A DNA stretch of 64,000 nucleotides from Macrostomum lignano. Taxonomy: Eukaryota. Shown here in pieces: positions 38,523 to 60,155 of the stretch (position 1 is its first letter; every line of letters begins with the position of its first letter). The translations under genes and the position numbers were made by a program. The notes beneath the pieces are model-generated. The model was given only the letters and a program-made list of their open reading frames with translations. It had not been told where the DNA came from and did no database searches. The DNA lies in NCBI GenBank assembly GCA_002269645.1, contig NIVC01000530.1, positions 434,001-498,000 on the forward strand, written 5' to 3'.

Positions 38523-39525
<1,003 letters not shown>

Positions 39526-42600: not shown

Positions 42601-45600
42601 TTATTAGCTGTTTATTAACCGGAAGTGGGTTAGTAGCTATTTATTAACCGGAAGTGGGTTAGTAGCTATTTAACCGGAAGTGGGTTAGAAGCTATTTATT
42701 AACCGGAAGTGGGTTAGTAGCTATTTATTAACCGGAAGTAGGTTAGTAACTATTTATAACCCGGAAGTGGATTATTAGCTGTTTATTAACCGGAAGTGGG
42801 TCCTCAAGTGGGTTACTGGTGGCTTGATGAACTGCAAGCTAGTAGTAGGGCGAATTATGATACTGCCGCACTAGCACTGGCGAGATAGGCGGCAATGCAA
42901 ATGTATAGGGAAAAATACACTGCGGAGATATGAGCCCTATCTCTGTGCATTGGGGACGGCTAAGCACTGCAGAGATATGAGCTCTATCTCTGTGCATTGG
43001 GGACGGCTAAGCACTGCAGAGATATGAGCTCTATCTCTGTGCATTGGGGACGGCTAAGCACTGCAGAGATATGAGCTCTATCTCTGTGCATTGGGGACGG
43101 CTAAGCACTGCAGAGATATGAGCTCTATCTCTGTGCATTGGGGACGGCTAAGCACTGCAGAGATATGAGCTCTATCTCTGTGCATTGGGGACGGCTAAGC
43201 ACTGCGGAGATAGAGGCGATTCATGATACTGCCGCACTAGCGCTGGCGAGATAGGCGGCAAAAAGGATATAGGAAAAATACACTGCGGAGAGGATCCTAT
43301 CTCTGTGCATTGGGAACGGCTAAACATTGCAGAGATAAGAGGGGTGGCCAATCTCTGTGCTCTGTGTTAGGGTAAGGTTATAAAGTTTTACAACTGCACA
43401 GAGGACGGCTGGTGTTGCTTACCTGGATAAGGGGACGGGGGGATACACTAATTACAGCCAGTGGCCTCTATAACGGTAAAGTAATTATTACCTGAGCATG
43501 GCTGGATGTTCATATACGATATGATAAGGAGAGGGCATGCATGTACAAATTACTATATAAGCAGCCACGCAAGTACAAATAAACAAATAGACAAAAACAA
43601 ATTGTATAAAAGGATTTTTAAAAACCTTACTACTTCTAAAAAACAACTCTTTCTCTTTCAAAATGAAAACTTTTAAAAGTTGTCATAGAGACCTCTATGA
43701 GGTCTGTATAAGCTGCGAAGTGTGCCTGCTTGGAGGCGTGTCCCCAAGACACCACGAGAATGAGAACTGTCTGGTCTCATGCTGGTTGGCATGCGACCAG
43801 TGCGGCACCGTCGAAGCTCTGCAGGAGGGAAAAATTCCAGCATATCATCGAGGACACAAGATCGTCAGCGATGACAAGAAAAAGCAAGAAAGTAACCGCT
43901 GGAAAGTAATCCGCGCCATCAAAAAGAGCAACGAGAGAGAAAAGAAGAGCCAGCAGAAAAAGGGAGCCAGCAGGAGTCTGCTATCAGCTCACTTGAGTCA
44001 AGTAATTGACTCTACATTGAAGAGGATGAGGCCAAGCGGGTCTTCAGCAGCTGCAGAATTTGAAGTTGAGCTGTCTGCTGGAGTCGAGGCTGCTGGAGTC
44101 GAGGCTGCTGGAGTCGAGGCCGCTGGAGTCGAGGCTGCTGGAGTCGAGGCTGCTGGAGTCGAGGCTGCTGGAGTCGAGGCCGCTGGAGTCGAGGCTGCTG
44201 GAGTCGAGGCTGCTGGAGTCGAGGCTGCTGCTGTCATAAACTTCATAGAGGAAGATGTCCTGGATCAGTTCCTCAGGGAATTCAACGCTGGTCAGCAGCA
44301 GCAGCAGCAGCAACCTGTCTCTTCGGTTCCGGTGATTGCTGGAAAACAACTTCATCTAATTGAAGACGACCACGAAATGGAAATCCTAGAAGAGGAGGGC
44401 AGCGACAATGAGTCGCATAATGCAATTGTGCCACCTGCAGCTCCAGCCGCCCCAGCTGCTCTGGCCGCCCCAGCTGCTCTGGCCGCCCCAGCTGCTCTGG
44501 CCGCCCCAGCTGCTCTGGCCGCCCCAGCTGCTCTGGCCGCCCCAGCTGCTCCAGCCGCCCCAGCTGCTCTGGCCGCCCCAGCTGCTCCAGCCGCCCCAGC
44601 TGCTCTGGCCGCCCCAGCTGCTCTGGCCGCCCCAGCTGCTCTGTCCGCCCCAGCTGCTCTGTCCGCCCCAGCTGCTCTGGCCGCCCCAGCTGCTCTGGCC
44701 GCCCCAGCTGCTCTGGCCGCCCCAGCTGCTCTGGCCGCCCCAGCTGCTCTGGCTGCCCCAGCTGCTCCAGCCGCCCCAGCTGCTCTGGCCGCCCCAGCTG
44801 CTCCAGCCGCCCCAGCTGCTCTGGCCGCCCCAGCTGCTCTGGCTGCCCCAGCTGCTCCAGCCGCCCCAGCTGCAGCCTCTACAATTCCAGCTTCTCAATC
44901 CGAAACTCCACCCGTGCCAGCTGGAGTTGCCTTCTTTCTGCCTCCTGTCGGCGGGGCTGGGTACGAGGTAACGATTTTCGAAAATCGTATTAGAATTGTG
45001 CCGCTGTGACTAAGCAATTTTTGTACTTTTTTGCTTTCTGTGTGGAGTGAGAAATCTACCCATTTATTGCAATTATTGCTAAAACTTTATTTCAACTAGC
45101 TTTTTAAAGTTGAAAGTAGGTACATTAATTAATGATTTGATCATCTCATAACTCTGTATTCGCTTCTAGGAATCTTGCTTATAAGTTTTCAGTTTTCATT
45201 TCCAAATTAGTTTTAAAAAAAGCTCGTAGCTCGTAGTGGCAACCAATATTTTTTTGGTATCCGAGGTAAAAAAAAATTATTTGAAAAGTAGGTGAAACAT
45301 TATACAGTTGAATTTAACAAATTAAAATCAACATAACATACTTTCAATAAATTGGTGATGGTTTCGTATGCTTGGTGCGATTGATTAGGTATAATTTTCT
45401 TTCTACTGCTTTGATGCGGTGTTTCCTCATTCTTTAATTATTGAACTTTTCAGCTATATTTCTGCTTCTAAACTCTCGTCTGTATTTGTAATTCATTGTT
45501 CCATGCATTGTTTATTGACTATGATTGCACCATGTGAATTCGATATTTTTTTAAAATATATATATATAATGTCAGCATTTTTCCACTCGGTGATTGGTTT

Positions 45601-48600
45601 GTTAATTAACTATTGGCTTCATTTTGCATTTTTTACCGATTGAGTCTGCGTAGGAGGCAAATAGAAACGAACTTTTACGAATAGGGATCAATAGAATATG
45701 CATGCAGAGAGCTAGCTTAAGGGAGAACCAAAAAAATATAACCAGCATCTACTAGCTTGTAAGTGTGGATATTGTACCAGTATTGCAGCAATAAAGACTT
45801 ACGAAAAAAGATTTCAAATATTCACTCCCAGTTGCTTATGACACTCAGTTGCAGCCAGTAAACACTGTCAGCTTTTAACTGCTTGCCTTTTCTATGGTTG
45901 AGCACTCCTGGATGGAGCAGGAGAATGACCACTCATGGATGGAGAATGACCACTCATGGATGGAGAATGACCACTCATGGATGGAGAATGACCACTCATG
46001 GATGGAGAATGGCCACTCGTGGATGGAGGATGACCACTCGTGGATCGAGTATGACCACCCTTGGGTGGACCATGACGTCAGCAGCGAGTCAGCAGCCAGC
46101 AGCGAGTCGGCAGCCAGCAGCGAGTCGGCAGCCAGCAGCGAGTCAGCAGCCAGCAGCGAGTCAGCAGCCAGCAGCGAGTCAGCAGCCAGCAGCGAGTCAG
46201 CAGCCAGCAGCGAGTCAGCAGCCAACAGCGAGTCGGTGACTGATGCACACCAAGGTAAGTGCCTTTATTTATCCTTTTCAACTTACTTAAAAATTTTCTT
46301 ATCAATGCGATGTATATTATGCAGTCTAAAATTTTAGTCCAAAGAATGGGAGAAGGGGAGATAAAAGACTTTATACCGGTAGGGTTGTACATGTATGCTT
46401 GGGTACAGACGTTTAGTTTAGTATCTTTGATATTTGAAACTATAGGCAGCAAAAAACAAAAATATTATCCTAAAACCACAAACCAGGTTCAACAGTCAGC
46501 TTCAGCAGAGTTGCCCAAGCCTATGATCAATCACTGGAAATACTGAGGCTCAGATCGAGTCACCCAGACACGCTTCCGTCAGAATTTTTTGTCCAAGCTG
46601 GAGACAAAATTATTGAGGCAGTTCAGCAAAGAATTTCAAGACATCATTACAAAGTTCAGCTAAAGGTGAATATTCGAATGGTCCGAATAAGAGATGGGGA
46701 GATGCTTGCCGAAGAGGACAGATGGATAAGCTGTAAAATGCAGGCCCTAGACCTAGGTGGTGAAGCAGGCCGTTTAAACAACTGGTTGATTGAGCAGGAG
46801 CAGGAGTTGGAGAGGATCTGTAGTATGATTAATACGAACGGCAGTGGCTGGACAATTAAACAAATTAATTTTCTAGACATCAACCTTGCCAGGTACAATC
46901 CAATTCGATTTCGCCAGGGCAGAGCCGTTAGATTCAATCTTCCTGCCAGTTTGAAGAACAAAAAGGCTGTTATCAATCCACCGAGCACAGGCAAAGACTG
47001 TTTCCTGTACGCCTGTCTCGCTGCACTGCACAGCGCCGATCCGAAAGTTCAGAAATCGCCCAACAGAATATCCTCTTACGATGAATGGTTGCGTGAGCTG
47101 GACTTTGCAGAAATCTCCATGCCAGTGAGTGTCGCTGATATCGATCGCGTCGAGTCTAACAATCCAGGAATTTGCATTTCTGCGTTCTCTTGGCAGCAGG
47201 GCAGTGTGACTCTTCTCCGTCGCCGCAAGCATGAGTCAGATGACCGAAGACACCTCATGCTTTTGCTAGTTAAAGACAGCTACGGATCGGAGCACTGGTG
47301 TGCAATTACTAATTTTGACAGGTTAATGAACAGTCGTAATGGTCCCGCCATGAGGAAGTGGTGCACGAAATGTTTAACATCATTTTATAGCAACGAGAGG
47401 CTTCAAGAGCACAGGAACGAATGCAGCATTACTGCAGAAAATCCTGTCAAAGAAACGCTTCCAGTTCCAGGACAGAATGAAATAAAGTTCCGAAACTGTC
47501 AAAACACTGTCAGTCCACCATTCGTTGCCTATGCCGACCTGGAAGCCATTTTGCGAGCGAACACAGACCCTGCTAACCTGATCTCAAAGCATGAACCATG
47601 TGCAGCAGCTTTTCTTGCAGTGCCTCGTGAAGGCATGACAGGACCTCCGCTTAGGCCAGAAGGAGACATGTACAAGGTCTTTTGCAATGCGGACCCTGAT
47701 GAGTGTATCCTTGGTTTTCTCAAATCTCTTGAAAGCCTGGCTCAGGATATATTTCACTGGAACCAGAAGCATAGCCACCAGCCGGCTGACCGATCATCCG
47801 CGACCGTCATGGATGATTTCAATTCTGCTGAGGTATGTCACTACTGCAAGAAGAACTTTAAAAGTTCTACAGATAAACATTTTGACCACGATCATTTAAA
47901 TGGACAGTACAAAGGTGCAGCATGTCAAGAATGCAACCTGCGAGCACAGCTCCGACGCCGGTTTCTGCCCCTGGTTTTTCACAACTTAGGCGGCTACGAC
48001 CTTCATCTTCTACTTTCCACTGCGCTTGGGAGCATGAAAAATTGGAAACTTAGTGTTGTTCCGCAATCATCCGAGCGATACTTGTCACTAAGGGCGGAAT
48101 TCCCTGTTGCAAGTTACGTAAAGAACGGAAAAGTTGTGCCAATCATGTTTACAATTCAGTTCATCGACTCGCTCTGCTTTTTGAAGGGAAGTTTGTCCAA
48201 TTTGTTTGCTAATCTTCCCGAAGCTGAATGCAAGCTGACAATGCAAATGCTTGAGTCAAGACCACATCTTTCAAGAGAGCTACTTCGAAAAAAAGGGATT
48301 TTCCCATATGATTACCTCACAGGATTTGAGATTCTCGAGCAGTCGGTTTTGCCGCCTAAAGATGCTTTTTTTAATCGACTTTCCGATCGGGGAATTTCCG
48401 ACGACGACTACAATAGAGCAAGAGCGGCATGGGCGGCATTTCAATGCAAAAGTTTGAAGGATTATATGCTCGCCTATCTTGAAATGGATGTAAGGCAGCT
48501 GGCTGACATTTTCGAGACATTCCGACAGGCCAGTCTGAAAGAGGACGGATTGGATCCGGTACACTACTTTACTACTCCTGGTTTGTCTTACGACTCAGCT

Positions 48601-51600
48601 CTAAAGTCGACTGGAGTGGTTCTAGAGCAGCTGACTGATGCTGACATGTATCATCTGTTTGAGAAGGGAATACGAGGAGGCATGTCCTTCATTAATGTGC
48701 ATTGCGTCAAAGGTAATAATCCTAGCTTGCCAGGTTATGATGATCAGCAAGAGAGTGTAAGCCTCATGCGATCGATATGAACAACTTGTATGGCTTTGCC
48801 CTGTCGCTTCCGCTTCCATGCAGGGAATTCAGGTGGGTACCGGAACAGGAAATCCAGTTCTGGGACTCCAATCGGTTTCTGTCACTCAATCCAGAAGCCG
48901 AGATCGCCTACCTTGTTCAACTCGATCTAGAATACCCAGCTGAGATTCACGATTCGACTCAGGAGTTACCGTTTGCACCTGAAAAATCAAAACCACAGCC
49001 AGATCAATTCTCGCCGTACATGGCCGAACTATGGAAAGAGATTGCTGAACAGCGAACTGGCAATGCTGAAGCTAAGTTTCAAGCAACGGAGAAGCTTCTA
49101 CTCACCTGTACCGACAAGGATTCTTACGTAGTTCACAGCACCGTTTTAAGATTTTACCTGCAACACGGAATGCGGATCAAGTGCGTCAAAAAATGATTTC
49201 GTTCAAGCAGGAAAATATTTTCGCGCCGTACATTGCCAGCAACAATGAAAAAAGAGCTTTGGCAACTTCCGAGTTTGCTAAGGATTTTTACAAATTGAAA
49301 AACAATTCTCTCTTTGGAAAAACTATGGAGAACGTTCGAAAAAGATGCGATGTTCGAATTTGCACTAACCAGACTCAAGCAGAAACTTGCGCCTCTCGAC
49401 CAAACTGTGCCGCATTCTCGATTATCAATGAGTCGTTGAGCATTTTTCAGCTCAAAAAAGATAAAGTCACGCTTGACAAGGCCATTTTCGTTGGCCAGGC
49501 AGTTCTCGATCTCTCTAAGATGGCCATGTACAGCCTACTATATGACAGGCTCCGACCGCTGTTCTGTCATTCAGACGGTTCCAGAGACATGATGCTTTGC
49601 GGAGGTGATACTGACTCATTTTTTCTAGCTTTCAAGAATCATGATTTAACATCGGAGGTAATCCCGAAGCTTAGAGAGGAAAAAATACTTGACACATCCA
49701 ACTATTCTCGAGACCATCCGCATTTCTCTGAAGAGTTAAAAGGAAAGCTGGGCTGCGTTAAAGATGAATCTGCTGGTGGAATTTACCAGGAGTGGATTCT
49801 TTTGCGTCCAAAACTTTATTCGTTTCTCCCTGCCGAGAATTCGAGTGCAAAGATCAAGAAAACTGCCAAAGGCGTGAAGCAGTCAGTAGTAAGACAGCAA
49901 ATTTCGCATGCGAACTATGTCGACGCGTTCGAGTCCAAGCAAGAGCAGATGGTTGCCATGACAGCGATTGTTTCCAAGAAACACGAAATCTTCACGTCGG
50001 TCATGGAGAAAAGAAGCCTATCGGTGTGGGAGGATAAGCGAGTGTGGCTTAGCAGTAATCGAAGCCTGCCCTACGGACACTATGCGCTGACGCCCGCATC
50101 CCACGATCAGCTGAAGCGCATCCGACTGGTCTAGTGCGGGTGTTTAACAGACTGTTTAGTACTTTTTCTTGCTTTTAGAGTTGTTTAAATTGCCAAATTC
50201 TGTTTTAAATGTAGTGACTTGCATGTAGTAACTTTTACAAATTTGTATGCTTGGCTAATTGCGCTAGATTTAGCTGTCAATTTGTTTTTGCGGCGTGAAA
50301 TATTGATATCAATTTAAGTTTTACTTTTTATAAAGCTGTGTGGCAAGTGCGCTCATACAATATTAATTCATTTTTGTTTGCTTTGTGTACTACTTGTTTA
50401 AAATGTGTTTTTGGTTTTTATCTGACACAAATTGTTCCTGTAAATTCAATCAGCGTTTTAATCATATTTTCTCTATCACTTTTCTATTTCTCTTCTCTCG
50501 GTGCACATCGTTTGTTATAACGATGGTAGTATTGTTTACTTTCGGATTTGATATGCGTTTTGCGATACTTTTGGTGATGGGCTAAATACGTTTTTGAAGT
50601 GTTCCATAGCTGTCTGCCTGGGAAAATGAATGTAAAGAATACCAAGTTTATCCTTTTATTCACTTTTCACTAATCATTGAAATATTTGCGGCAAATTGCT
50701 TGACTTGACTTTATTTTTATTCAATGGAAAGAACTACATTGAGTAGACGCATGCTATCGGTATGCAACTGATTCAAGGACCGAGCTCCACTGAGAACAAA
50801 AGAGCCGCTGTGAAAAAGCAGACATTTACAAAAGTTTAAATTGAAAATTAAAGCAGAAAAGGATTCTGGTTCATATTCGGCGTTTGGGATAATTGATTTT
50901 AACATTAATAAGGAAAGTGCGGAATGAACTGGGAGCTGTCCATGAGCAGTAATAGTTTTAATTCGAACACAAATTGTTTGATGAGGCAGCAGTTGAGCCG
51001 GCACTCTCCGATGCAGCATAGCCACGAAGCGACGGGCAGCCCTTTTGGCGTCTGCGTGGGTCTTGGCACCGCAGATGCTCAGTTGCCCAGTAGGGTAGAG
51101 TAGGAGAGTCACTCTGGGAATCCGCATCCGCTTGATGAGCACCCGGGGCCAGACGGGCCGGTAGATCACATGAGCCATGCTGAGAGCCAGTTCCCGTAGA
51201 GGCAGCTGAGCGCCCCTGCCACCATCCAGTCTCAGATCTACTCCGCCAACCAGATTGGTCACTCTTAGGGCTGTAGCTGGTGGGCTCATTTCGATCGTCA
51301 ACTTCTTCACCAAATCTGCTTCTGCCAACTTTACTGCTCGTGTGCCACGGACACTGCTCGCTTCTTAAGTTGATGCAGAACTTTGGCTTAAGCCAACTGT
51401 AGTGCAGCAACGAATTTCTCACTGCACAGCCAGTATCTGAATCTTCAGTCGAGGGTGCTCCCAAATCTTCTAGGTTATAAACCTGTCTTCCAAGCAGCTC
51501 AGTCAGAAAAATCGACTTCCTTTCCCCATTTGACCAGATCGGACCACTGGCAATGCTCAGAATGTCTTCCGCCAGTTCCATGTACGGACGGGTTCCATCA

Positions 51601-54600
51601 TTCCACTTAAACTGGTGCAGACTCTTAGATAGCTGTCTGTAGTAAACTCGCATGTCAGGTGAGACTCTCTCCCATGGATACGGAGGTGCGTACACATGGT
51701 GAGCAATGTGGTAGCTCCCCGCTCTGATTTGAACAACTGCCAACTCCTTCACAACAAATTTTTTGCTTGTGCTGTTGCACGGGAATCCTTGGAAGTCAAT
51801 GTAGTTCATGATGCAGCTTTCCTTCGAAAATTTCGGAGTCAGTCCACCTTCTTATATACTTTTCTGGCAGGCAATTTCAGCCAGGCTGTGTTGCTCCCGT
51901 ACCCCTTGACTAGACTCTCCTGTTCTTTCTCCAGTTCACCCCTCTGCTGGTTGCCATTTTCTTCTTAACTGATTTACCAACAGCGGAAAGCGGAACATTA
52001 AGCTTTTTCTGCTGCAGAAAATCGATGAACTCGTTCCACCCAACTGGTTCACGCTCACATGGCGAATCCCTCACTGTGTGCTGAATCAAGTCCAGTATGT
52101 TTGAGGAAGGGATTGACGTGCCTGCGATTTCCACCTCCCCGTTTTCACAAACTCGAATCAGCTCTGGATTGGTGGACAGGATCGTCCACAGACTGCGAGC
52201 CCTGGTTTTGAATTTCTGTGGCACCGACTTGCTGATCTTCTCTTCCCAGGTGCTTATCTGGGGTGTCTCTGTTTTCATCAACTTGGCTTCAGTATTGCGT
52301 GCTCCTTCTTTTCCAGCGTGCTTGCGCTTGGCCAGCAAACTTTGCATTGCACTTTGGTACATGGCGGTTTTCACATCTTCTGGACAATCCTCGGCATACA
52401 AGATGTCATCGCATTTCTTCTGAGCCTGCTTCAAGTCAGCTTCAGTGGTAGTCTCATTTGGCTTCAAATTCTGCATCAACATCTCATACTCTGCTTTAGG
52501 AATCAGAACCATTTCTGAAAATTTGTTCATTTTGCTTCTTCTTCTTTACCAGCTTAAGCAGAATCGGGAGTATTTTGATGAAGCCAGCCTTCAACAAGTC
52601 TGTCTTTCTTCTTTTGTGAGTAATTTTTCGAATTATCTCTTTTGACTTTGCAAGAACAGCTTTTTCATCGAGCGAAAACGATAGATTGTTTTGTAAGAGA
52701 TTATGGCAGGCCTCGACAAGAAAATAACGCACTTCTTTTGGACAATTTTTTATCAACAGCCGCTTGAAGCGCACGGTATATTTAGGTGACGCAAGAACCG
52801 CAAAAAACTTGCATATGAATCAAGCACTTCCATTGCGATGAAAACAATAGCTGATAAAAACAAGCTTCACTTTCTTAAGCAAATACAAGATGGGGTCGCT
52901 GGTTGGGCAGAATTCTGGCCCGCACTCGCAGCTCATCGGGAGTTGATGGTGAAAGTCTAGGAACAGGTAGGCTCCCCTGCCCTGCGCGGTCACGTGCTTG
53001 AACACTGACAGCAGAAAGCCGGGCTTCTCTGTAAAGCACTGCCTGCCCAGTGCTGCAATCTGCAGCTGGTCTCGGGGTTTTTCAAGATAGCTAAGTACAT
53101 TACATTCAAGCTCATTGTTCGCGACTCTTTTCCCTTGAAAAATATATTCTGAGTCAGCATCACCAAAAAGCACGGCAAGTGATGTGCGATTCCTGTGAAA
53201 AAATTTCGCATTGAAGCAGAGTTTGAAGTTTCCTCTATTAAGTCATCGAAAACAACCAGGTCATTGGGCCTAAGTGCTGCCTCGATGTTGGTGGGAAATC
53301 CCTGGCGCAGCTGCACACCTAGGCTGTTCAGTTCTGCATGGCCTGCCTGTGAGATCCCATAGTACCACAGAACTCTGCCAGGCTTCACATCAAACATGAC
53401 GTCTCTGTACTGGATCAGGTGTTCGACAAAGGTTGTTTTTCCTGCATTGGTGGGCCCGCAGACAATCATGCAGCTTCCCTGCCTGAGGCGGATATCGTAG
53501 CAAACTTGCTTTTCTCCCATGTTTAATGCATAAATATTAGAAATCACGGACATCTTTTTCTTAAGTTGGCTTCAAACCTCTGTAAGATTCTATCATTCAA
53601 ATGATTTTTCATTAGCATGCAAATGCTTCAAAATCCCCTCAAATGACCGATTGAACAGAAACTTTTGATAAGCAAAATAGATGCAAAACATTCCGCATTT
53701 ATTAGAGTTAGCACATTGAACTCTGTTTATATTGCTTCGGAGCCAAAAGCCAGTTGTTTTAATCTCTCGAAACAAATTATAAACCAAAGATAAAATTTCA
53801 GGTTCCCAGCCGAGGGAGTTGAACAACTCAATGCGATTTCCTTGCCCAACATAGCACACCACCCAGTGACCAAATGAGCCATTGTGCTGAAGTAGGACAA
53901 AAACAAACTTGTTTTCAAAGGAAATTGATGATCTAAATTTTCTTTTTACATTCAAGGGCAGAGAATTTTTATAGCGCAAATGTAAAGTAACTATGAGAAA
54001 TTTTTGGTAAGGCAAAAATTTTCTGGCGAGATTAAGTAGTTGAATTGCATCCATGTCAATTAAGAGGAATAGTCCAGCAAAAGCTCTCGTGCTTGGTGAC
54101 CTCAATCAGCGAGTCATACAGGCACATAGCAATCAGGGACACCGCTTCATTCAGAGCCTGTTGGAAGCGAATCTCCAGCCGCAGGTTGCCCTCCTTCTGT
54201 CCGTACCACAGAGCCGCTCCCTCGGGTGTGAGATCGAATGCAAACACCGTGGTGTTGTTGGAGAAGAGCTGGTAGGGGATCCACGGACCGAGTTTGTGTG
54301 GCTTGCAGATTGACAGCTTTTCAGGTAGTGCAAGTATTCTCTTACAAGGAATTGTTTTCAGGTGTGAAGGCGCCGTGGCACACGGTTTCCCCACCTTTCT
54401 TTAGAGCCAATCGGCTAAGGTTGAAGCTCTGGAACTGGAACGGGCTCGCGTGATGATGACCGTTGAATGCTCGGTGGCTCACGAAGGCCAGCATGATGAA
54501 CTTCGGCAATTTTCCATGAGTGAATCCTTCAATGTTTTTGACTGAATACCCTGGGTAGGATGAAGTTCTGCATTTCAGTTCGCTCGATGGGATACAGTGC

Positions 54601-57600
54601 ATTTTGGTTTGTCAGCCCCTGCTCATGGGCCAGGCTGATGTGGGGCATCACTTTGACTCGGCGAAGATGCAGAATGCTGTGAGAGATTTCCATTCGGTAT
54701 GCCGCGTTGTTTGCATTCGGGGTTCTGATGGCAAAGGCCCCATCGCTGGGGACCAGTTTGATGTGCAGGTGCAGATTGCTTAGCAGAAACACTGGGCACT
54801 GGAAAACATCGCTGAAGAGCGGCCCCGCATACTCCATCCATTGGGATTCCCTGTGGCTCTCCGTGTGCTCTTCAGCTGCCGAGTTCGGCTCCAGGAAGCC
54901 AGCAGGGTAAAGTTTTAGTTGCTGGGCATCGGATGAGCTCATTAGTGCTTTGAAGTACGCATGGTAGGGATAGAGCTGGTCTCCACCAGACACCACTCGC
55001 TGGTTAATGCTCACATTACATCTGAGAAGGCTGTAGACAGAACAAAATTTTCTGGGTGCACGTCACTGTCTCTGCGCTCGGTGATGATGCCATCTCCATC
55101 TCGAACATCCTCCTCAGCAAACCCCCATCCAGTCTCACAAGGCGGCAGCGAATATAAAGAAAAGAATTAAGCAGATCTGTATTCATCGGCAGATTGTGGC
55201 AGTCAAATTCAATGGGAGAGTTTGCAACAATGGAATTAACTGGGTGAATATCAACATAAGTAGCTTTTTCAATGCAGGTTTGTAGAACGGGCGTCTTAAA
55301 TAAATCAAGTCTGGGATTGAATCCGTAAGCCATGTCTATGACAGAGAGTCGAGCACGCGTTTCACAGTTTTCTTTGCTGACTTTTGCTTTCGCTTTCCTC
55401 CGCCTGCTCTATTCTTCTTTGCTTTCGTCTTCCTATTCTTAAGCTTTTTCCCACTAGCCTTGCTCGACCTCTTACTGCGATTTCCACCAGTTGCCTTTCG
55501 GGTGCCCTTCTTTTCTTCAATCGTTTCGGACTTGCTTCAGTATTTCTTTTGCGCCTGACGTTGCTAAGCGTCGAGGCTGATGATGATGATATAGCCGCTG
55601 GCGGAGGCTGGTATGTCATGATCCCTGGGAAGCTCCCACAGCCATAGAGTGCAGGCTTTTCGTGTCCTGTCCTCACCCCGAATATTGCTGGATTAGCTGC
55701 TGGTAGTTCATTGAATGCGTTTCTCCTGAATTTGAACTGTAAGCAGAACAGGGCTGTGAGTCTGTGCAATCAGTGGGCAACCATAGATGTCCGCAGCTGA
55801 ACTCGAATGCTGTGAAGAAGACTGATTCGTTGAATCGGGAAGAATATTGTTTTCTTAAATATTTTTGTTTGATAGTTGCCCCATTCAATGCCAGCTTTCA
55901 TTCCAACTGTTCTCAACAAGGAGCTCCAGTTGCAATTAGTTGACTCAACGATACTGCAGTGCACATTGATTAAGCTGGTGCGCGGGCAGCCAATGCAATG
56001 CTCGGATACGCGGCTCCCTGGCTGGATTTTCACAGCCTGGTTTCCAAATCCCAGCCAATGCAGAATTTTACTAGATGGAAGAAACAGCTCTGCTCTCGCA
56101 GTGTTGTTGTGCACCACAGTTCGTGAGTTGCGGATTTCGAACTTCATACCAAATTCCCTGTTGCCACTACGCCCCATCAGGCCGGACTCATCAGCCTCCA
56201 TCTCAGACTCCCTGTCACTCATTGCATCAAAGAACAGCGAATCAGAGTTGGCCAGCAGCTCATTCAGGCGCCACCAGCTCCTCCACTCTAGCAAAGCGTC
56301 CGGGTTGAAGAACCAGGGCCTCATGCTCTCTTCCATCTGAGACAGTGAAGCAGTAAGGCTCGTCAACATTGAACCATGCAGCAGGCAGATGGATTTCAGC
56401 CAGACCTGCCTCATAGTCCACATTTCGATCCAAGTAAATAGGTGAAGGCAGGTAAAAATTAAAGTCACTAGGAGTACCTTCAGCATGCTCACTGTTAATC
56501 AAAATAGTTCGCATTATAATCATAAACTACATGATGAGGGCTGTGCCAAAGCTAAACCTTTCTTAAGTCTTTTCATCCACCCAGCCAGTCGAGTCGTAGC
56601 CCGCCCATTTCACCAGATAGCGAATTTTTCCCTTCCGCTTCTCCGTTTTCAGGATCTTCTCAATCACATACAGCCGCTGTGAGTCCGGGACAGCCTGCAG
56701 CTCGTGCTCATGGAAGAGTCCTCGAATCTCTTGCCCCCGCATGTCTTTAATCTTGTACATGTAGGGATAATGTTTTGGGGCTCTGCTCACCACGGTGTAC
56801 ACTTCCTCACTCCAGCTCGCTTTGTATCCCTTTTTGAATATCCGTGGAGCATTGGAAATTCTCACTGACTGGTTTTCAGCGAACTTAGGCTTCTTTAATT
56901 TTTCTAGAGTCTCGACTGCTTTTCCATCGTACAGGTTCATCCACACTTCAGATTCATTCTCTTTGCAGACACTAGTGGGTGCCATTTTGATGCTTCTGTG
57001 GTAGGTATTGTTGTAGGATTTTACCAGCTTAGGCAGCACATCAAGCCAGTGCAGTGTGCTCTTGTAGGTGAAGTAGCGCCACATTCTACTTTTCAGAGTT
57101 CGATTCCATCGCTCAATGACAGCTGCCTTCTGCTCGCTGTTAGTTGGGAAAGCCAGAATCCCTCTGTCAATGCAGTATTGACGGAAAGTGGAGTTGATAA
57201 ATTCCTTCCCCTGATCTGTGCGAACTGTGCGTGGCTGGCGCTTTGAACTTCTCAGTATGCTCTCGAATGCTGACTTCACTTCTGCAGCAGATTTTTTTTC
57301 AGTGCCTTGGCCCAAGCACATTTTGAGAGCACGTCAATGCATGTGGAATATATTTGTAGCCTTTATTATGCTTTGCGAATGGAATCATTTCCACTAAGTC
57401 AAGTTCCCACTGATCATCGATTGCGCGCACTATGATTGGGGCCCTTGGATATCGCCTCCTAGCTGGCTTGTGCAGAGTGTGCACTGGCTGCTCGCTGAGC
57501 CACTGCTCAATGCTCTTTGCAGATATTCGATCACCTCTTTGCCTCACTTCATGCAGCAACTTTGAGGCACAAGAAAAACTAGCCGGTTGCTCAGGTTTCA

Positions 57601-60155
57601 AATAAATTTTCTCCATCATGGTTTATCAAGATACGTGCCTATCCACCTGCTCTAGCTGTACAGTATTTTTTCTTAAGTAGAAATTTATATTCCAATTAAA
57701 TGATAGAGAAACGAGTGGCAAATTAATTTATTACTGTCAGATTGAAACCTCTAACATCGTAACAGTCGGTGTATTTTCCGAAAGCAAACAATCCATAAAA
57801 ACGAACACTAAAACACTCGCACACCAGCATTTCAGAAATAGCAGAGATAAAAAACAGCATAGTGCCGTCAGGCTGGATAATCATGTGCAAGCTAAAAGTA
57901 ATTTAGTTAGTCCAATGCATTCAAAGCATTCTAGCTGTTCAGTTATCAAAGCGAACATTGGGCTGCAGCCTCATCGCGTCCTGCCGACGAAGTTGAAATG
58001 GCAGCTTTCGCTTCTGCTGCTGCTGCTCACCGTCGAAGCCGCTGCATGCGCCCTGAACTGATACCACACCGGATCTTCCTCAAGGTTGGTGTCCCGCTGC
58101 GGAAGCAGTCCAGCATCAGAATCAACCGAAGGTATCGGTGTGGATGTGATTGGCTCAGTCACAATGCGCGGCCTTGTGGGCGAGCTAACGTCCTCGTCAT
58201 CAGCATGATCTCCGCCCTCATCAGTCTCCATTATGGGCTTCGTGTCCTGGTCAGCCTCCAACTTGAGCTTCTTGTCCTCTTCCTCCTCTTCCTCATCAGA
58301 CTCCAGCTCGTACTGCATTGTGTTCCTCAAGGGAGCCACCAGCTGACCGTCGATCCAGGAGGCGATTTTCCAGAGCTTCTGCCACAGCGGCGGAGTCAGT
58401 GGTACGGCGTTTCGTCTCAAAAACTCCTCGCAGCAATCTTCCGGCAGCCGTTTGAGCCAAATGATGCCGCCTTTGACTTCCACAAACTTATCGAAGCCGA
58501 GTTTCACGACCTTGGGCTCGTTGTTGCGTGCAGAAATCACAAGTGAGCGTTTCACCTCCTTCAATTTCTTCCATTGGTGAACATTCAGGTTGAATCCTGG
58601 GACGCCTGGCTTCAGACTTGCCGTGCTGCCGTGTCGGTAAAATTTGCGAATAGCGATAAATTTTTGTCCTTCAAACTCCTGGACTTGTGCCTTATAGCCT
58701 TCACAGATGTCCATTTTCCTTTCGCAATTGAAAACTCACAAAAGTTAAAAGCTGAGGAAAATTTCGGATGAAATTTTGGATTTGAAAATTGAGAATTCTT
58801 TCTTGTCAATTTCGGGGCTTATATACCCTCGACCGAACCACCCCAAACCACCCATCCCACTCCGGGCTCTGTGATTGGCTCTTTCGCAAACATTATTTCC
58901 ATAGATTACACATATCTCTGCATTAATGCATACTCTTATCTCTGCAGTGTTAACCACCCCCAATGCAAAGAGATAGGCCGCCTCTCCTCCTATCTCTGCA
59001 GTGTTAACCACCCCCAATGCAAAGAGATAGGCCGCCTCTCCTCCTATCTCTGCAGTGTTAACCACCCCCAATGCAAAGAGATAGGCCGCCTCTCCTCCTA
59101 TCTCTGCAGTGTTAACCATCTCCAGTGTAAAGAAATAGGCCGCCTCTTCTCCTATCACTCCTGTGTTAAGCAGAGATAGAGCTCATATCTCTGCAGTGCT
59201 TAGCCGTCCCAATGCACAGAGATAGAGCTCATATCTCTGCAGTGCTTAGCCGTCCCCAATGCACAGAGATAGAGCTCATATCTCTGCAGTGCTTAGCCGT
59301 CCCCAATGCACAGAGATAGAGCTCATATCTCTGCAGTGCTTAGCCGTCCCCAATGCACAGAGATAGAGCTCATATCTCTGCAGTGCTTAGCCGTCCCCAA
59401 TGCACAGAGATAGGGCTCATATCTCCGCAGTGTATTTTTCCCTATACATTTGCATTGCCGCCTATCTCGCCAGTGCTAGTGCGGCAGTATCATAATTCGC
59501 CCTACTACTACTCAAGCTCATTATCCTCACTGTTCAGCCTCAAAAGGATCGCTTACTGCTGTGAGCAATCATAGAATAAGTGGATATGCAAATCCCTGCG
59601 CTACCCGGTCGCTCTTTAGACTCGCTGGTGAATCGACATATCTGAGAATCTTCGATAGTCGACCAGAGCCGGAACTGGCTGCGCCATTGTTCAACGGCTA
59701 CGCCGGAAGTGCACAGCACCAGGCATCGCTTACGCACAGTGCAAGCGGCCGTAACGCCTACTAAAGTTTACCAGCTCCGCATGGCAGCACAATGACACCG
59801 CTGCGAGCTCTGCCATTGCCGAACATCTTATGCAACGATCTCTCCTGATACGGCCGCAGTGTAGTTAGCGGCTTCAAATCTATAGACAGATTCGGATTCT
59901 TCGTATCCTGACGGAAGTCGTACGGCCATCAGAGGATAATCCAGTTCAGTGCAGCGCTTCTGCAGCACTTCAATCATGCTCTGTTGCACTTCTAGAGATA
60001 CTCGGCTGGCCGATGCGGCCAAGTCCTCCGCGGTGGCGTCCTCTCGTCCAGCCGATCGTATAGGTCAAGGATGTCGCTAGAGTGTCGGTTGTCGATGCGG
60101 CGGCGGCGGCTGAGTCAGCCTGCTGTTCAGCCGCTGCGGCTGGCACAGTGCGGCC
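39601..60155 (-). CDS. ERCC3: TFIIH helicase/translocase XPB; 3' exons present, one intron holds the Polinton
   Basis: Exon ~59531-60155 has [25 protein letters not shown] and [14 protein letters not shown], with several 1-bp indels. Exon 41100-41879 has [23 protein letters not shown] and [13 protein letters not shown]. Exon 39601-39936 runs from GYAFKV to HPLFRKFKR-stop. 5' exons not resolved near the gap. Confidence 0.93.
39970..41080. repeat. ~34-bp minisatellite in last XPB intron
   Basis: (CAACAAATCGTCACTAATAGATGGAATTCCCCCT)n. Confidence 0.93.
41970..42800. repeat. ~29-bp minisatellite carrying CCGGAAGT in XPB intron
   Basis: (AACCGGAAGTGGATTATTAGCTGTTTATT)n. Confidence 0.88.
42835..42840 (+). 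other. Left target-site duplication CAAGCT (right copy 59513-59518)
   Basis: The same hexamer directly abuts both element ends; 6-bp TSDs are typical of Polinton integrases. Confidence 0.95.
42841..43180 (+). repeat. Left TIR including six 47-bp units
   Basis: AGTAGTAGGGCGAATTATGATACTGCCG... is the reverse complement of 59171-59512. Unit GCACTGCAGAGATATGAGCTCTATCTCTGTGCATTGGGGACGGCTAA. Confidence 0.95.
43554..43561 (+). promoter_or_regulatory. Candidate TATA box (TATATAAG) of left-end ORF
   Basis: 109 nt upstream of ATG 43663; the same octamer precedes the PC4-like and exonuclease genes. Confidence 0.6.
43663..45009 (+). CDS. Polinton left-end ORF of unknown function (Cys/His-rich N-terminus, basic patch, EAAGV and APAAL repeats)
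   Basis: Uninterrupted 448-aa ATG ORF with unique N- and C-terminal sequence; internal repeats of 15 and 18 bp keep the frame; preceded by a TATA box. Confidence 0.7.
   Translation: MKTFKSCHRDLYEVCISCEVCLLGGVSPRHHENENCLVSCWLACDQCGTVEALQEGKIPAYHRGHKIVSDDKKKQESNRWKVIRAIKKSNEREKKSQQKKGASRSLLSAHLSQVIDSTLKRMRPSGSSAAAEFEVELSAGVEAAGVEAAGVEAAGVEAAGVEAAGVEAAGVEAAGVEAAGVEAAGVEAAAVINFIEEDVLDQFLREFNAGQQQQQQQPVSSVPVIAGKQLHLIEDDHEMEILEEEGSDNESHNAIVPPAAPAAPAALAAPAALAAPAALAAPAALAAPAALAAPAAPAAPAALAAPAAPAAPAALAAPAALAAPAALSAPAALSAPAALAAPAALAAPAALAAPAALAAPAALAAPAAPAAPAALAAPAAPAAPAALAAPAALAAPAAPAAPAAASTIPASQSETPPVPAGVAFFLPPVGGAGYEVTIFENRIRIVPL
45894..50134 (+). CDS. Protein-primed family B DNA polymerase (pPolB), split by apparent frameshifts; probable 5' exon 45894-46254
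   Basis: Terminal-protein-like region with GSGW; DCFLY and EHW (vOTU-like Cys/His); exonuclease motifs [13 protein letters not shown] and YLEMDV; EndoVII-like CHYC..DHDH..CQECN; polymerase motifs [18 protein letters not shown] and GGDTDS. Frame changes near 48775 and 49190. The reading frame is open from 46474. Confidence 0.95.
50717..51289 (-). CDS. Divergent TATA-binding-protein (TBP)-like protein, ~190 aa
   Basis: Two TBP half-repeats. Repeat 1: [64 protein letters not shown]. Repeat 2: [30 protein letters not shown]. These align by eye with TBP QNIVSTVNL / [34 protein letters not shown] / YEPELFPGLIY..LLIFVSGKVVLTGAK. Confidence 0.88.
   Translation of the reverse strand: MSPPATALRVTNLVGGVDLRLDGGRGAQLPLRELALSMAHVIYRPVWPRVLIKRMRIPRVTLLLYPTGQLSICGAKTHADAKRAARRFVAMLHRRVPAQLLPHQTICVRIKTITAHGQLPVHSALSLLMLKSIIPNAEYEPESFSALIFNLNFCKCLLFHSGSFVLSGARSLNQLHTDSMRLLNVVLSIE
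50958..51809 (-). CDS. DEDD/DnaQ-like exonuclease-family protein (recognisable domain ~51390-51809)
   Basis: YIDFQGF..FVVKELA..H..YAPPYPW..KWNDG..Y..G.RK..V.NLEDLG.P..CA..N..W resembles the small nuclease-fold proteins of Polintons and insect DNA viruses. The 3' part of the ORF overlaps the TBP-like gene in another frame. Confidence 0.6.
   Translation of the reverse strand: MNYIDFQGFPCNSTSKKFVVKELAVVQIRAGSYHIAHHVYAPPYPWERVSPDMRVYYRQLSKSLHQFKWNDGTRPYMELAEDILSIASGPIWSNGERKSIFLTELLGRQVYNLEDLGAPSTEDSDTGCAVRNSLLHYSWLKPKFCINLRSEQCPWHTSSKVGRSRFGEEVDDRNEPTSYSPKSDQSGWRSRSETGWWQGRSAASTGTGSQHGSCDLPARLAPGAHQADADSQSDSPTLPYWATEHLRCQDPRRRQKGCPSLRGYAASESAGSTAASSNNLCSN
51851..51858 (-). promoter_or_regulatory. 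Candidate TATA box (TATATAAG) upstream of the exonuclease/TBP-like cassette
   Basis: Plus strand reads CTTATATA; 49 nt upstream of ATG 51809. Confidence 0.5.
51910..52530 (-). CDS. Conserved uncharacterised Polinton protein (PW/PZ-type)
   Basis: Intact 206-aa ORF; the [32 protein letters not shown] pattern resembles a conserved Polinton core gene. Assignment to a named family is uncertain. Confidence 0.65.
   Translation of the reverse strand: MNKFSEMVLIPKAEYEMLMQNLKPNETTTEADLKQAQKKCDDILYAEDCPEDVKTAMYQSAMQSLLAKRKHAGKEGARNTEAKLMKTETPQISTWEEKISKSVPQKFKTRARSLWTILSTNPELIRVCENGEVEIAGTSIPSSNILDLIQHTVRDSPCEREPVGWNEFIDFLQQKKLNVPLSAVGKSVKKKMATSRGVNWRKNRRV
52496..52774 (-). CDS. Small basic Polinton protein, probable structural accessory (true start may be ATG 52814 via a frameshift)
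   Basis: [38 protein letters not shown] pattern and position between the ATPase and the PW/PZ-type gene. Confidence 0.5.
   Translation of the reverse strand: MRFKRLLIKNCPKEVRYFLVEACHNLLQNNLSFSLDEKAVLAKSKEIIRKITHKRRKTDLLKAGFIKILPILLKLVKKKKQNEQIFRNGSDS
52875..53520 (-). CDS. A32/FtsK-like genome packaging ATPase (two apparent frameshifts)
   Basis: Walker A GPTNAGKT, Walker B LVVFDDL, then HH..LTQNIF, RTMSLN and YL.ILKNP, continuing in another frame as [18 protein letters not shown]. Confidence 0.92.
53593..54054 (-). CDS. Adenain/Ulp1-like maturation cysteine protease
   Basis: GHWV (His), FNSLG, RVQ (oxyanion Gln) and CGMFC (Cys) in the canonical order; lies between MCP and ATPase. Confidence 0.88.
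   Translation of the reverse strand: MDAIQLLNLARKFLPYQKFLIVTLHLRYKNSLPLNVKRKFRSSISFENKFVFVLLQHNGSFGHWVVCYVGQGNRIELFNSLGWEPEILSLVYNLFREIKTTGFWLRSNINRVQCANSNKCGMFCIYFAYQKFLFNRSFEGILKHLHANEKSFE
54060..55333 (-). CDS. Major capsid protein (double jelly-roll, PY-type), broken by about five apparent 1-bp deletions
   Basis: LDLF.TP..QT.IE..YV..P..PIEF, DL..S.LY, INQRVVS..YPY.AY, LP.FIMLAFV..AFNG and L.LEIRF..AL are found in successive frames. Confidence 0.88.
55362..55711 (-). CDS. Small Arg/Lys-rich putative core (DNA-condensing) protein, one apparent frameshift
   Basis: ATG at 55711 overlaps the inferred mCP stop (ATGA). Reads [12 protein letters not shown], then LYGCGSFPG and a basic tract [24 protein letters not shown]. 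The 350-nt span becomes whole codons if one base is restored. Confidence 0.55.
55708..56523 (-). CDS. Minor capsid protein (penton, single jelly-roll), two apparent frameshifts
   Basis: F.FYLP.PI.L..YE.GL.EI.LP..W.N at the N-terminus; [21 protein letters not shown] near the C-terminus. Confidence 0.8.
56563..57619 (-). CDS. Retroviral-like (RVE/DDE) integrase with C-terminal chromodomain, two apparent 1-bp deletions
   Basis: [52 protein letters not shown]; chromodomain [15 protein letters not shown]. Confidence 0.95.
57971..58714 (-). CDS. PC4/Sub1-like ssDNA-binding protein with a second degenerate PC4 repeat and acidic tail
   Basis: [37 protein letters not shown] matches PC4 VRDFKGKVLIDIREYW..KPGRKGISLNPEQWSQLKE. 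Intact 247-aa ORF. Confidence 0.85.
   Translation of the reverse strand: MDICEGYKAQVQEFEGQKFIAIRKFYRHGSTASLKPGVPGFNLNVHQWKKLKEVKRSLVISARNNEPKVVKLGFDKFVEVKGGIIWLKRLPEDCCEEFLRRNAVPLTPPLWQKLWKIASWIDGQLVAPLRNTMQYELESDEEEEEEDKKLKLEADQDTKPIMETDEGGDHADDEDVSSPTRPRIVTEPITSTPIPSVDSDAGLLPQRDTNLEEDPVWYQFRAHAAASTVSSSSRSESCHFNFVGRTR
58818..58825 (-). promoter_or_regulatory. Candidate TATA box (TATATAAG) of the PC4-like gene
   Basis: 111 nt upstream of ATG 58714; CCAAT-like element on the minus strand at ~58871-58880. Confidence 0.6.
58937..59150. repeat. Right subterminal 54-bp tandem repeat (~4 copies), related to the TIR unit
   Basis: TATCTCTGCAG recurs at 58937, 58991, 59045 and 59099, and shares the CAATGCA.AGAGATAG motif with the 47-bp unit. 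Confidence 0.85.
59171..59512 (-). repeat. Right TIR including six 47-bp units
   Basis: Near-identical inverted copy of the left TIR; differs by one extra terminal AGT and a 1-bp indel. Confidence 0.95.

What the first reader, a model, noticed from the sequence alone, without database searches (positions are those of the whole stretch)
42835..59530. Young, complete Polinton inserted 18 nt from the splice donor of an essential TFIIH gene
Seen: perfect TSD, near-identical TIRs and a full gene set. The right end lies at intron position 19 after the GTGAGG donor at 59530, enlarging the XPB intron to ~17.6 kb. The structural genes run sense to XPB, so the host pre-mRNA would read through them. Inference: recent and possibly still active or polymorphic.
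Basis: partly seen in the sequence, partly recalled or inferred. Interest (0 to 1): 0.75.

Follow-up and report, generated by a model that had tools for sequence, protein, structure and literature searches.

The report
Young Polinton inside flatworm XPB intron
A 16.7-kb virus-like Polinton (Maverick) element really has inserted recently, 18 bases into an intron of the DNA-repair/transcription gene XPB of a Macrostomum-type flatworm. This is an ordinary kind of element, and the draft assembly is too error-prone here to say whether this copy, or this XPB copy, is intact.

Summary
The element spans 42841-59512 (16,672 bp) and has AG...CT termini, a perfect 6-bp target duplication (CAAGCT) and inverted ends that are 100% identical over 303 nt. 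It sits 18 nt after a GTGAGG donor of XPB on the minus strand and enlarges that intron from 973 to 17,651 nt. It carries a protein-primed DNA polymerase, an rve+chromodomain integrase, an adenovirus-type protease and a P-loop ATPase. Two capsid candidates are assigned by position only. There are also TBP-like and PC4-like genes.

"Complete/active" is not shown. As assembled, five core genes hold at least 9 frameshifts but no in-frame stop. A 6.9-kb module is 94.7% identical to a Polinton in Macrostomum lignano (NIVC01000096.1). The two copies differ with dN/dS 0.23 and no stops, although about 11 stops would be expected under neutrality. They also differ by 38 frame-changing indels, mostly 1 nt. 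Together with the identical ends, this points to long-read assembly errors rather than decay.

The adjacent XPB 5' exons show the same damage, so "essential gene" cannot be asserted for this copy either. Verdict: a new member of a known kind, a young insertion whose intactness is undecidable without reads. Interest is modest.

The parts
42835..42840 (.). Left copy of the 6-bp target-site duplication, CAAGCT
   Evidence: Read directly; identical hexamer abuts the other end.
42841..59512 (.). The Polinton/Maverick element, 16,672 bp, termini AG...CT
   Evidence: Bounds come from the TIR and the junction reads. No other copy or fragment lies in the window.
42841..43212 (.). Left terminal inverted repeat arm: a terminal unit followed by a 47-bp tandem array (6.3 copies). 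A second, internal copy of the terminal motif lies at 43215-43261.
   Evidence: It is 100% complementary to the right arm over 303 nt.
59171..59512 (.). Right terminal inverted repeat arm: a 47-bp array (5.6 copies) followed by the terminal unit, with one extra AGT at the tip. A 54-bp array at 58933-59169 lies just inside.
59513..59518 (.). Right copy of the target-site duplication, CAAGCT
43663..45009 (+). 448-aa ORF with a Cys/His-rich N-terminus followed by peptide tandem repeats; function unknown; open
   Evidence: The positional homologue in the M. lignano copy is 26% identical, E 7e-13.
46666..50134 (+). Protein-primed family-B DNA polymerase with an Endonuclease-VII-like zinc module. 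As assembled it is broken by 2 frameshifts and has no in-frame stop.
   Evidence: Pfam gives Endonuclease_7 at 6.5e-6 and DNA_pol_B_2 at 3.7e-4. It is collinear with the uninterrupted 1198-aa homologue P0121 over 94% of that protein, 47% identity. The two frame changes have essentially no gap, so they are not introns. Palm motifs are visible in the translations.
50717..51809 (-). TBP-like gene: a 129-aa N-terminal part in one frame and a two-repeat TBP domain in another. The same arrangement occurs in the M. lignano copy. A 94-nt GT-AG interval (51329-51422) would join the two parts in phase.
   Evidence: Pfam TBP 1e-24; PDB TBP 1mp9 5.6e-19. dN/dS is 0.28-0.29. The intron model is an inference.
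51910..52530 (-). 206-aa ORF, function unknown, open
   Evidence: The same ORF is present in L004; dN/dS 0.47.
52496..52774 (-). 92-aa ORF, function unknown, overlapping the next ORF by 35 nt in both copies
52820..53553 (-). P-loop ATPase, candidate genome-packaging ATPase. As assembled it is broken by 1 frameshift and has no stop.
   Evidence: A Walker A motif is in the translation and at least one frame switch is needed. The uninterrupted 226-aa orthologue in L004 gives only weak hits: AAA_22 at 0.016 and Pox_A32 at 0.026. PDB returns P-loop proteins only.
53593..54105 (-). Adenovirus-type cysteine protease, open
   Evidence: Pfam Peptidase_C5 at 1.4e-4, 22.0 bits against a cut-off of 21.3; dN/dS 0.24.
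54056..55333 (-). Candidate major capsid protein (~430 aa). As assembled it is broken by 3 frameshifts and has no stop in the coding frames.
   Evidence: Relatives P0139 and P0140 (73-77% identical) together span it, and at least 3 frame switches are needed. dN/dS is 0.09-0.55 by piece. Identity as a capsid protein rests on position and size only; there were no Pfam or PDB hits and the models were unusable.
55362..55769 (-). 135-aa ORF rich in basic residues, function unknown, open
   Evidence: present in L004; dN/dS 0.42.
55711..56523 (-). Candidate minor (penton-like) capsid protein, family of ~250-270 aa. As assembled it is broken by 2 frameshifts and has no stop.
   Evidence: It is collinear with P0134 (269 aa, 99% covered) across two frame changes. 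dN/dS is 0.09. Function is inferred from position and size only.
56563..57619 (-). Retroviral-type (rve) integrase with a C-terminal chromodomain. As assembled it is broken by at least 1 frameshift (up to 3 frame changes against the M. lignano copy) and has no stop.
   Evidence: Pfam rve 3.6e-6 and Chromo 1.2e-5. The L004 orthologue gives rve at 4.5e-13. dN/dS is 0.09-0.10.
57971..58714 (-). PC4-like (transcriptional coactivator p15) gene with an acidic C-terminal half, open
   Evidence: Pfam PC4 5.1e-8; PDB 4usg 8.9e-5. A 77%-identical stretch is present in L004.
41880..59530 (-). Host XPB intron holding the element: 17,651 nt, or 973 nt without the element and one TSD copy
59531..60160 (-). 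Host XPB 5' exon(s) covering the helicase motif I region; the upstream limit was not determined. As assembled they hold at least 4 small frame anomalies, including an out-of-frame stretch with 2 stops just before the donor.
   Evidence: tblastn with XPB homologues shows the frame changes. Sequence; splice test.
41100..41879 (-). Host XPB exon (260 codons, helicase core), open
   Evidence: It is 77-78% identical to metazoan XPB and follows an AG acceptor.
39601..39939 (-). Host XPB last coding exon with its stop codon
42081..42799 (.). 29-bp satellite (24.8 copies) filling most of the original intron, 35 nt from the insertion site
60660..61184 (.). Assembly gap (525 N), 1.1 kb from the element's right end

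Best explanation
This is a genuine, evolutionarily very recent integration of a Polinton/Maverick (polintovirus-type) element into an intron of one XPB copy. The host is Macrostomum lignano or a close relative.

Mechanism, inferred from the family's established biology: the element's own retroviral-type integrase joined the linear double-stranded DNA to a staggered 6-bp cut, giving the CAAGCT duplication. Replication is by the protein-primed polymerase from the terminal inverted repeats. The protease, ATPase and two capsid candidates form a virion module.

The insertion begins at intron position +19. It therefore leaves the core donor and the distant branch point and acceptor untouched, so the intron could still be removed, although it is 18 times longer and carries sense-strand genes and poly(A)-like signals.

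The lineage this copy belongs to has been kept functional by selection. The at least 9 frameshifts seen in five genes, and those in the neighbouring XPB exons, are most likely indel errors of a long-read draft assembly in a poorly polished stretch next to a gap. They are probably not real lesions.
For: Shown:
- The TIR is 303 nt and 100% identical; the TSD is perfect; the termini are AG...CT; the size is 16.7 kb.
- The flanks are consecutive XPB exons.
- Polymerase, integrase and protease are identified by Pfam or homologues.
- Window 50784-57617 is 94.7% identical to M. lignano NIVC01000096.1. That copy has the same AGTAGTA terminus and subterminal motifs.
- Over 1893 aligned codons dN/dS is 0.23, against 1.09 and 1.23 in the two control frames. 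There are 0 stops, where 5.6-11.2 would be expected if unconstrained.
- The same 6.9 kb holds 49 gap events, 33 of 1 nt and 38 not a multiple of three, spread over both assemblies. They are enriched in homopolymer runs: 43-58% against 19% background.
- No in-frame stop accompanies the frameshifts.

Inferred: if at least 9 real indels had arisen after insertion, roughly ten times as many substitutions would be expected, and so several differences between the arms. None is seen.
Against: - No reads were available, so no frameshift could be checked directly.
- Other host exons in the window are free of frameshifts over about 3.9 kb (PDI, C2-domain gene, XPB 3' exons). An error explanation therefore needs a locally poor stretch, not a uniform error rate.
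- The two capsid genes and the ATPase are assigned by position, size or weak hits only.
- The host species is inferred from one 6.9-kb match and a polymerase best hit. No host gene of the window was found in the collections.
Confidence: 0.72

Rival explanations
1. The frameshifts are real. The copy is a recently inserted but already defective (non-autonomous) element, moved by proteins supplied by intact relatives, or it was inactivated very quickly after insertion.
For: As assembled, five core genes need at least 9 frame switches. About 3.9 kb of host exons elsewhere in the window show none. The M. lignano copy is also interrupted, at other places.
Against: - There are no in-frame stops in either copy, although 244 coding substitutions separate them.
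- dN/dS is 0.23.
- The arms are identical.
- The indels are mostly 1 nt and enriched in homopolymer runs.
- The flanking XPB exons carry the same kind of lesion.
Confidence: 0.22
2. The XPB copy carrying the insertion is a redundant or decaying paralogue or allele, not the essential gene, so the insertion has no fitness consequence.
For: - The 5' exons hold at least 4 frame anomalies.
- The last codons before the donor contain two stops as assembled.
- The N-terminal exons are absent from the window, and satellite DNA and a gap lie upstream.
- From general knowledge, M. lignano carries a recent whole-genome duplication, so several XPB copies are plausible.
Against: The 3' exons (1.1 kb) are open and 77-78% identical to other metazoan XPB proteins. 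The damage is of the same indel-only type as in the element, which fits assembly error.
Confidence: 0.3
3. The juxtaposition is an assembly artefact: two loci were joined through a repeated Polinton.
For: The family has other copies in Macrostomum. The window is a gapped draft.
Against: The same hexamer flanks both ends. The two flanks are adjacent XPB exons in the right order and orientation, and the GT-AG join keeps the up- and downstream frames in register.
Confidence: 0.03

Closest known systems
Polinton/Maverick elements (Kapitonov & Jurka 2006; Pritham et al. 2007; capsid genes in PMC4028283), now classed with polintoviruses
   Same: 15-20 kb size, 6-bp TSD, long TIRs, AG...CT termini, protein-primed PolB, rve integrase, adenovirus-type protease, P-loop ATPase, and two genes in the place of the capsid pair.
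   Different: The capsid genes are not recognisable by Pfam, PDB or the models made here. Extra genes are present: TBP-like, PC4-like and a Cys/His-rich repeat protein. The integrase carries a chromodomain. The polymerase carries an Endonuclease-VII-like module.
Polinton copy in Macrostomum lignano assembly GCA_002269645.1, contig NIVC01000096.1:121098-142957 (locus L004)
   Same: 94.7% DNA identity over 6.9 kb, from the TBP-like gene to the integrase. It has the same gene order, the same AGTAGTA terminus and subterminal motifs, the same TBP-gene arrangement and a PC4-like gene.
   Different: The polymerase is only about 45-60% identical at protein level and the ends have diverged, so the two are mosaics that exchanged modules. 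It lies at a different genomic site. Its frames are interrupted at other places.
Adintoviruses (PMC8502044)
   Same: Animal-associated, with PolB plus an rve integrase plus a virion module. That paper's figure legend lists a TBP-like gene among accessory genes of adinto-like viruses of non-animal eukaryotes.
   Different: No phylogeny was made here. No relative was found in IMG/VR viral contigs. This copy is chromosomal and has a TSD.

Membership tests
Polinton/Maverick | Length about 15-20 kb | tested here: met
   16,672 bp between the duplicated hexamers.
Polinton/Maverick | 6-bp target-site duplication | tested here: met
   CAAGCT at 42835-42840 and 59513-59518.
Polinton/Maverick | Terminal inverted repeats of hundreds of bases | tested here: met
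   303 nt at 100%. The arms are about 340-370 nt including 47-bp arrays that differ in copy number.
Polinton/Maverick | 5'-AG ... CT-3' termini | tested here: met
   AGTAGT... and ...ACTACT. The same terminus is present in the M. lignano copy.
Polinton/Maverick | Protein-primed family-B DNA polymerase | tested here: met
   Collinear with the 1198-aa homologue P0121 over 94% of it. DNA_pol_B_2 scores 3.7e-4, below Pfam's cut-off. Relatives are named DNA-directed DNA polymerase by UniRef. Two frameshifts as assembled.
Polinton/Maverick | Retroviral-type (rve, DDE) integrase | tested here: met
   rve 3.6e-6 in the window piece and 4.5e-13 (above the cut-off) in the 95%-identical L004 orthologue; chromodomain 1.2e-5.
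Polinton/Maverick | Adenovirus-type cysteine protease | tested here: met
   Peptidase_C5 at 22.0 bits against a cut-off of 21.3, E 1.4e-4. The margin is narrow.
Polinton/Maverick | FtsK/A32-type packaging ATPase | tested here: inconclusive
   A Walker A motif is present. The best hits are weak: AAA_22 at 0.016, Pox_A32 at 0.026, and PDB P-loop proteins only.
Polinton/Maverick | Double jelly-roll major capsid protein | tested here: inconclusive
   The candidate lies at 54056-55333. There was no Pfam or PDB hit. AlphaFold models of the two halves had pLDDT 40 and 31, too poor for a fold search.
Polinton/Maverick | Single jelly-roll minor (penton) capsid protein | tested here: inconclusive
   The candidate lies at 55711-56523. 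It has only 5 relatives in 1.8 billion representatives, with no annotation and no Pfam hit.
Adintoviridae (proposed) | Placement of PolB, integrase and capsid genes within the adintovirus clades | not tested
   No reference sequences were on hand. IMG/VR scans with the polymerase and the capsid candidate found nothing.
Host gene XPB/ERCC3 | Collinear, translatable helicase exons on both sides of the insertion | tested here: inconclusive
   The 3' exons are open and 77-78% identical to XPB. The 5' exons match XPB but change frame several times and show two stops before the donor as assembled.

The most novel reading that the evidence does not exclude
The window captures a currently live polintovirus lineage of the laboratory flatworm Macrostomum. 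The copy would be intact, present on only some chromosomes, and recombining by modules with sister lineages. It would carry its own TBP-like and PC4-like transcription factors and sit where it can interfere with expression of a TFIIH subunit. That would make Macrostomum a tractable animal in which to observe Polinton biology by sequencing and expression alone.
Probability: 0.3. Interest if true: 0.6.

Novelty: new member of a known kind. Interest (0 to 1): 0.35.

Why it matters
Polintons are widespread in animals, yet few copies are demonstrably young and few lineages have been shown to evolve under selection. Here the identical ends date the insertion as very recent. The comparison with a second copy shows purifying selection on the integrase, protease, capsid candidates and the TBP-like gene, together with exchange of modules between lineages.

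If reads confirm open frames, a model flatworm would carry a candidate live polintovirus with its own basal transcription factors.

The case is also a practical warning. In long-read drafts, repeats and regions next to gaps can carry dense 1-nt indels that mimic pseudogenisation of both the elements and the neighbouring host genes.

Tried and rejected
- **Introns as the cause of the split ORFs: rejected.** The junctions leave gaps of only -4 to 8 nt (50 nt in one lower-identity comparison) against uninterrupted homologues. The exception is the TBP-like gene, where a conserved 94-nt GT-AG interval fits.
- **Natural decay after insertion: disfavoured.** See the identical arms, the absence of stops and dN/dS.
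- **First dN/dS run discarded.** One search used wrong frame anchors for four pieces; one search replaces it.
- **Capsid identification failed.** Pfam, PDB profile searches and two AlphaFold jobs gave nothing usable. No fold search was run because the models were meaningless.
- **Searches for other copies or an empty site failed.** Exact look-ups of five window ORFs found nothing. IMG/VR scans found nothing. There is no second copy in the window and no Rfam family.
- **More distant polymerase relatives** (L005, L006) share only the polymerase.
- **Literature:** no paper in the library links Polintons or Mavericks with Macrostomum.
- **Poly(A)-like hexamers** on the XPB-sense strand number 19, against about 14 in shuffles. 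This is not informative.
Full report
**1. The observation**

The two ends of the stretch pair as inverted repeats, 100% complementary over 303 nt (42840-43142 with 59208-59510). Each arm consists of a terminal unit followed by a 47-bp tandem array, with 6.3 copies on the left and 5.6 on the right.

Reading the junctions places the element at 42841-59512 (16,672 bp). It starts AGTAGTAGGGCG and its reverse-complemented right end starts AGTAGTAGTAGGGCG, so the right tip has one extra AGT unit. The hexamer CAAGCT lies directly outside both ends (42835-42840 and 59513-59518). These are the textbook marks of a Polinton/Maverick: 6-bp TSD, long TIRs and AG...CT termini.

**2. Host context**

XPB/ERCC3 lies on the minus strand.
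- A 260-codon exon (41100-41879) is 77-78% identical to metazoan XPB.
- The last coding exon is 39601-39939.
- Exon sequence for the helicase motif I region lies at 59531-~60160.

The exon ends at 59531 and GTGAGG follows at 59530. The acceptor AG precedes 41879.

The intron is 17,651 nt, and 973 nt without the element and one TSD copy. Most of that remainder is a 29-bp satellite. The residues encoded on the two sides are adjacent in XPB homologues. Together with the TSD, this makes a chimeric assembly join very unlikely.

**3. Gene content**

Plus strand:
- A 448-aa Cys/His-rich repeat protein.
- The protein-primed polymerase (46666-50134). Pfam gives Endonuclease_7 and, weakly, DNA_pol_B_2. 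It is collinear over 94% of an uninterrupted 1198-aa homologue.

Minus strand, sense to XPB:
- A PC4-like gene.
- An rve integrase with a chromodomain.
- A ~270-aa-family gene and a ~430-aa gene in the positions of the minor and major capsid proteins.
- A small basic ORF.
- A Peptidase_C5 protease.
- A P-loop ATPase.
- Two ORFs of unknown function.
- A TBP-like gene with both TBP repeats.

The capsid assignments could not be confirmed. There were no Pfam or PDB hits, and AlphaFold models of the two halves were unusable (pLDDT 40 and 31). The ATPase gives only weak hits, including Pox_A32 at E 0.026 through the orthologue of the second copy.

**4. State of the reading frames**

As assembled, five core genes are interrupted by frameshifts only:

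| Gene | Frameshifts |
|---|---|
| Polymerase | 2 |
| Integrase | at least 1 (up to 3 frame changes against the second copy) |
| Penton-like gene | 2 |
| Capsid candidate | 3 |
| ATPase | 1 |

That is at least 9 in all, with no in-frame stop. At the junctions essentially no sequence is missing relative to uninterrupted homologues, so these are not introns.

The PC4-like gene, the protease, the TBP-like gene's two parts, the 448-aa ORF and three small ORFs are open.

**5. A second copy, and what it shows**

The best polymerase relatives are from Macrostomum lignano. The contig behind one of them, NIVC01000096.1 of GCA_002269645.1 (locus L004), holds a related element.
- Window 50784-57617 aligns to it at 94.7% identity over 6.9 kb.
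- Its left end has the same AGTAGTA tip and subterminal motifs.
- Its polymerase and termini are far more diverged (about 45-60% at protein level).

The family is therefore mosaic. Synonymous divergence per segment runs from about 0.01 to 0.66, which also points to exchange of modules.

Over 1893 codons taken piecewise in the frames as they stand, dN/dS is 0.23, against 1.09 and 1.23 in the two shifted control frames. It is 0.09-0.10 for the integrase and 0.09 for the penton-like gene and one capsid piece. None of the 244 coding substitutions makes a stop in either copy. About 11 stops would be expected if all were unconstrained, and 5.6 if half were. The two lineages therefore diverged while coding for functional proteins.

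The same 6.9 kb nevertheless holds 49 gap events between the two assemblies. Of these, 33 are of 1 nt and 38 are not a multiple of three. The window is the shorter sequence at 29 events and L004 at 20. The 1-nt events fall in homopolymer runs of three or more 43-58% of the time, against 19% background.

Selection against amino-acid change and stops cannot coexist with dozens of real frameshifts. In addition, at least 9 real indels after insertion should have been accompanied by several differences between the arms, and there are none.

The most economical reading is that most of these indels are consensus errors of long-read draft assemblies. I give this about 0.7. The main rival, at about 0.2, is a truly defective copy. 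I cannot decide between them without reads.

**6. The XPB copy**

The same kind of damage affects the XPB exons next to the element. Homologues align in changing frames across 59531-60040. The canonical GT-AG join 59531/41879 keeps the upstream and downstream frames in register. However, the last five codons before the donor are out of frame and contain two stops. An assembly gap of 525 N lies 1.1 kb further on.

In contrast, about 3.9 kb of host exons elsewhere in the window are uninterrupted. Either the stretch from the element to the gap is locally of low quality, as would happen if the insertion-bearing haplotype had low coverage, or this XPB copy is decaying.

"Essential gene" therefore cannot be asserted for this copy. 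The N-terminal exons are not in the window.

**7. How it most likely works**

From the established biology of the family:
- The integrase joins the linear DNA to a 6-bp staggered cut.
- The polymerase replicates from protein primers at the TIRs.
- The protease, the ATPase and the two capsid proteins make particles.

The TBP-like and PC4-like proteins would, by inference, serve transcription of the element's own genes.

For the host, the core donor (positions -3 to +6) and the acceptor region are untouched, so splicing remains possible. RNA polymerase must, however, cross 16.7 kb that includes eight or more sense-strand genes and poly(A)-like hexamers. There are 19 of these against about 14 by chance, with a cluster at the end of the gene block. 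Whether transcripts are lost is untested.

**8. Comparison and novelty**

This is a member of a known kind. Of the defining features, seven are met, including size, TSD, TIRs, termini, polymerase, integrase and protease. Three are inconclusive: the ATPase type and the major and minor capsid folds.

TBP-like genes have been listed among accessory genes of adinto-like viruses (PMC8502044). No paper in the library links Polintons with Macrostomum.

**9. What could not be done**

Copy number, the empty-site allele and expression could not be examined. No eukaryotic read or genome collection was available, and exact look-ups of window ORFs found nothing. Viral-contig scans were also negative. Short Logan contigs from runs SRR31628392, SRR31628403 and SRR31628425 carry relatives, including an uninterrupted 1198-aa polymerase ORF. 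Their organism is unknown to me.

**10. Verdict**

It is a young, well-delimited Polinton in an XPB intron. Its gene set is complete in content, but its intactness is unproven and is masked by probable assembly errors. Interest is 0.35.

Noticed in passing
window 50717-51809 (-); L004 13911-15012 (-): The TBP-like domain ORF and a 283-aa ORF overlap in different frames in the same way in both copies. A 94-nt GT-AG interval (51329-51422) would join a 129-aa N-terminal domain to the TBP domain in phase. The best solved relative of the TBP domain is an archaeal TBP (1mp9, E 5.6e-19).
   Followed up: partly
window 57971-58714 (-): An element-encoded PC4-like (p15 coactivator / single-strand DNA-binding) domain with a long acidic tail. 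A diverged copy is present in the M. lignano element.
   Followed up: partly
window 50784-57617 versus 46666-50134; L004: The two elements share a 95%-identical structural/integrase module but have polymerases only about 45-60% identical. Synonymous divergence jumps from 0.08 to 0.66 within the integrase. Together these point to recombination between Polinton lineages.
   Followed up: partly
window 59531-60160 (-), gap 60660-61184: The XPB 5' exons change frame several times against homologues, once inside the codons of the nucleotide-binding loop, and show two stops just before the donor. A 525-N gap and satellite DNA lie upstream, and the N-terminal exons were not found.
   Followed up: partly
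window 43663-45009 (+): A 448-aa ORF with a Cys/His-rich N-terminus, conserved with the M. lignano copy (E 7e-13), followed by 15-bp and 18-bp coding tandem repeats. Its function is unknown.
   Followed up: partly
window 46666-48780 (+): The polymerase carries an Endonuclease-VII-like zinc module (Pfam 6.5e-6). Its M. lignano relatives are named OTU- or ULP-protease-domain proteins by UniRef, which suggests an N-terminal cysteine-protease-like domain.
   Followed up: no
window 12459-13805 (+): A protein-disulfide-isomerase-like gene in one 448-codon ORF. Both of its thioredoxin active sites read C-x-H-S (WCIHS, WCDHS) instead of the usual C-G-H-C.
   Followed up: no
window, many places (e.g. 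1356-2978, 17118-19664, 26705-28447, 38520-39510, 39927-41078, 61185-64000): The window is packed with long tandem arrays, several of them filling introns, including the XPB intron between the last two exons. Open reading frames run through them by chance.
   Followed up: no
L002 511-4107, L003 179-3775, L001 513-1124: Short Logan contigs from runs SRR31628403, SRR31628425 and SRR31628392 carry an uninterrupted 1198-aa polymerase (47% identical) and a capsid-candidate fragment (73-77% identical). They may be transcripts of related elements in another species.
   Followed up: partly
window 13885-14048; L004 3443-3634: A 194-bp stretch outside the element is 75% identical to sequence flanking the M. 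lignano element. It is probably a shared interspersed repeat and gives weak support for a Macrostomum host.
   Followed up: no
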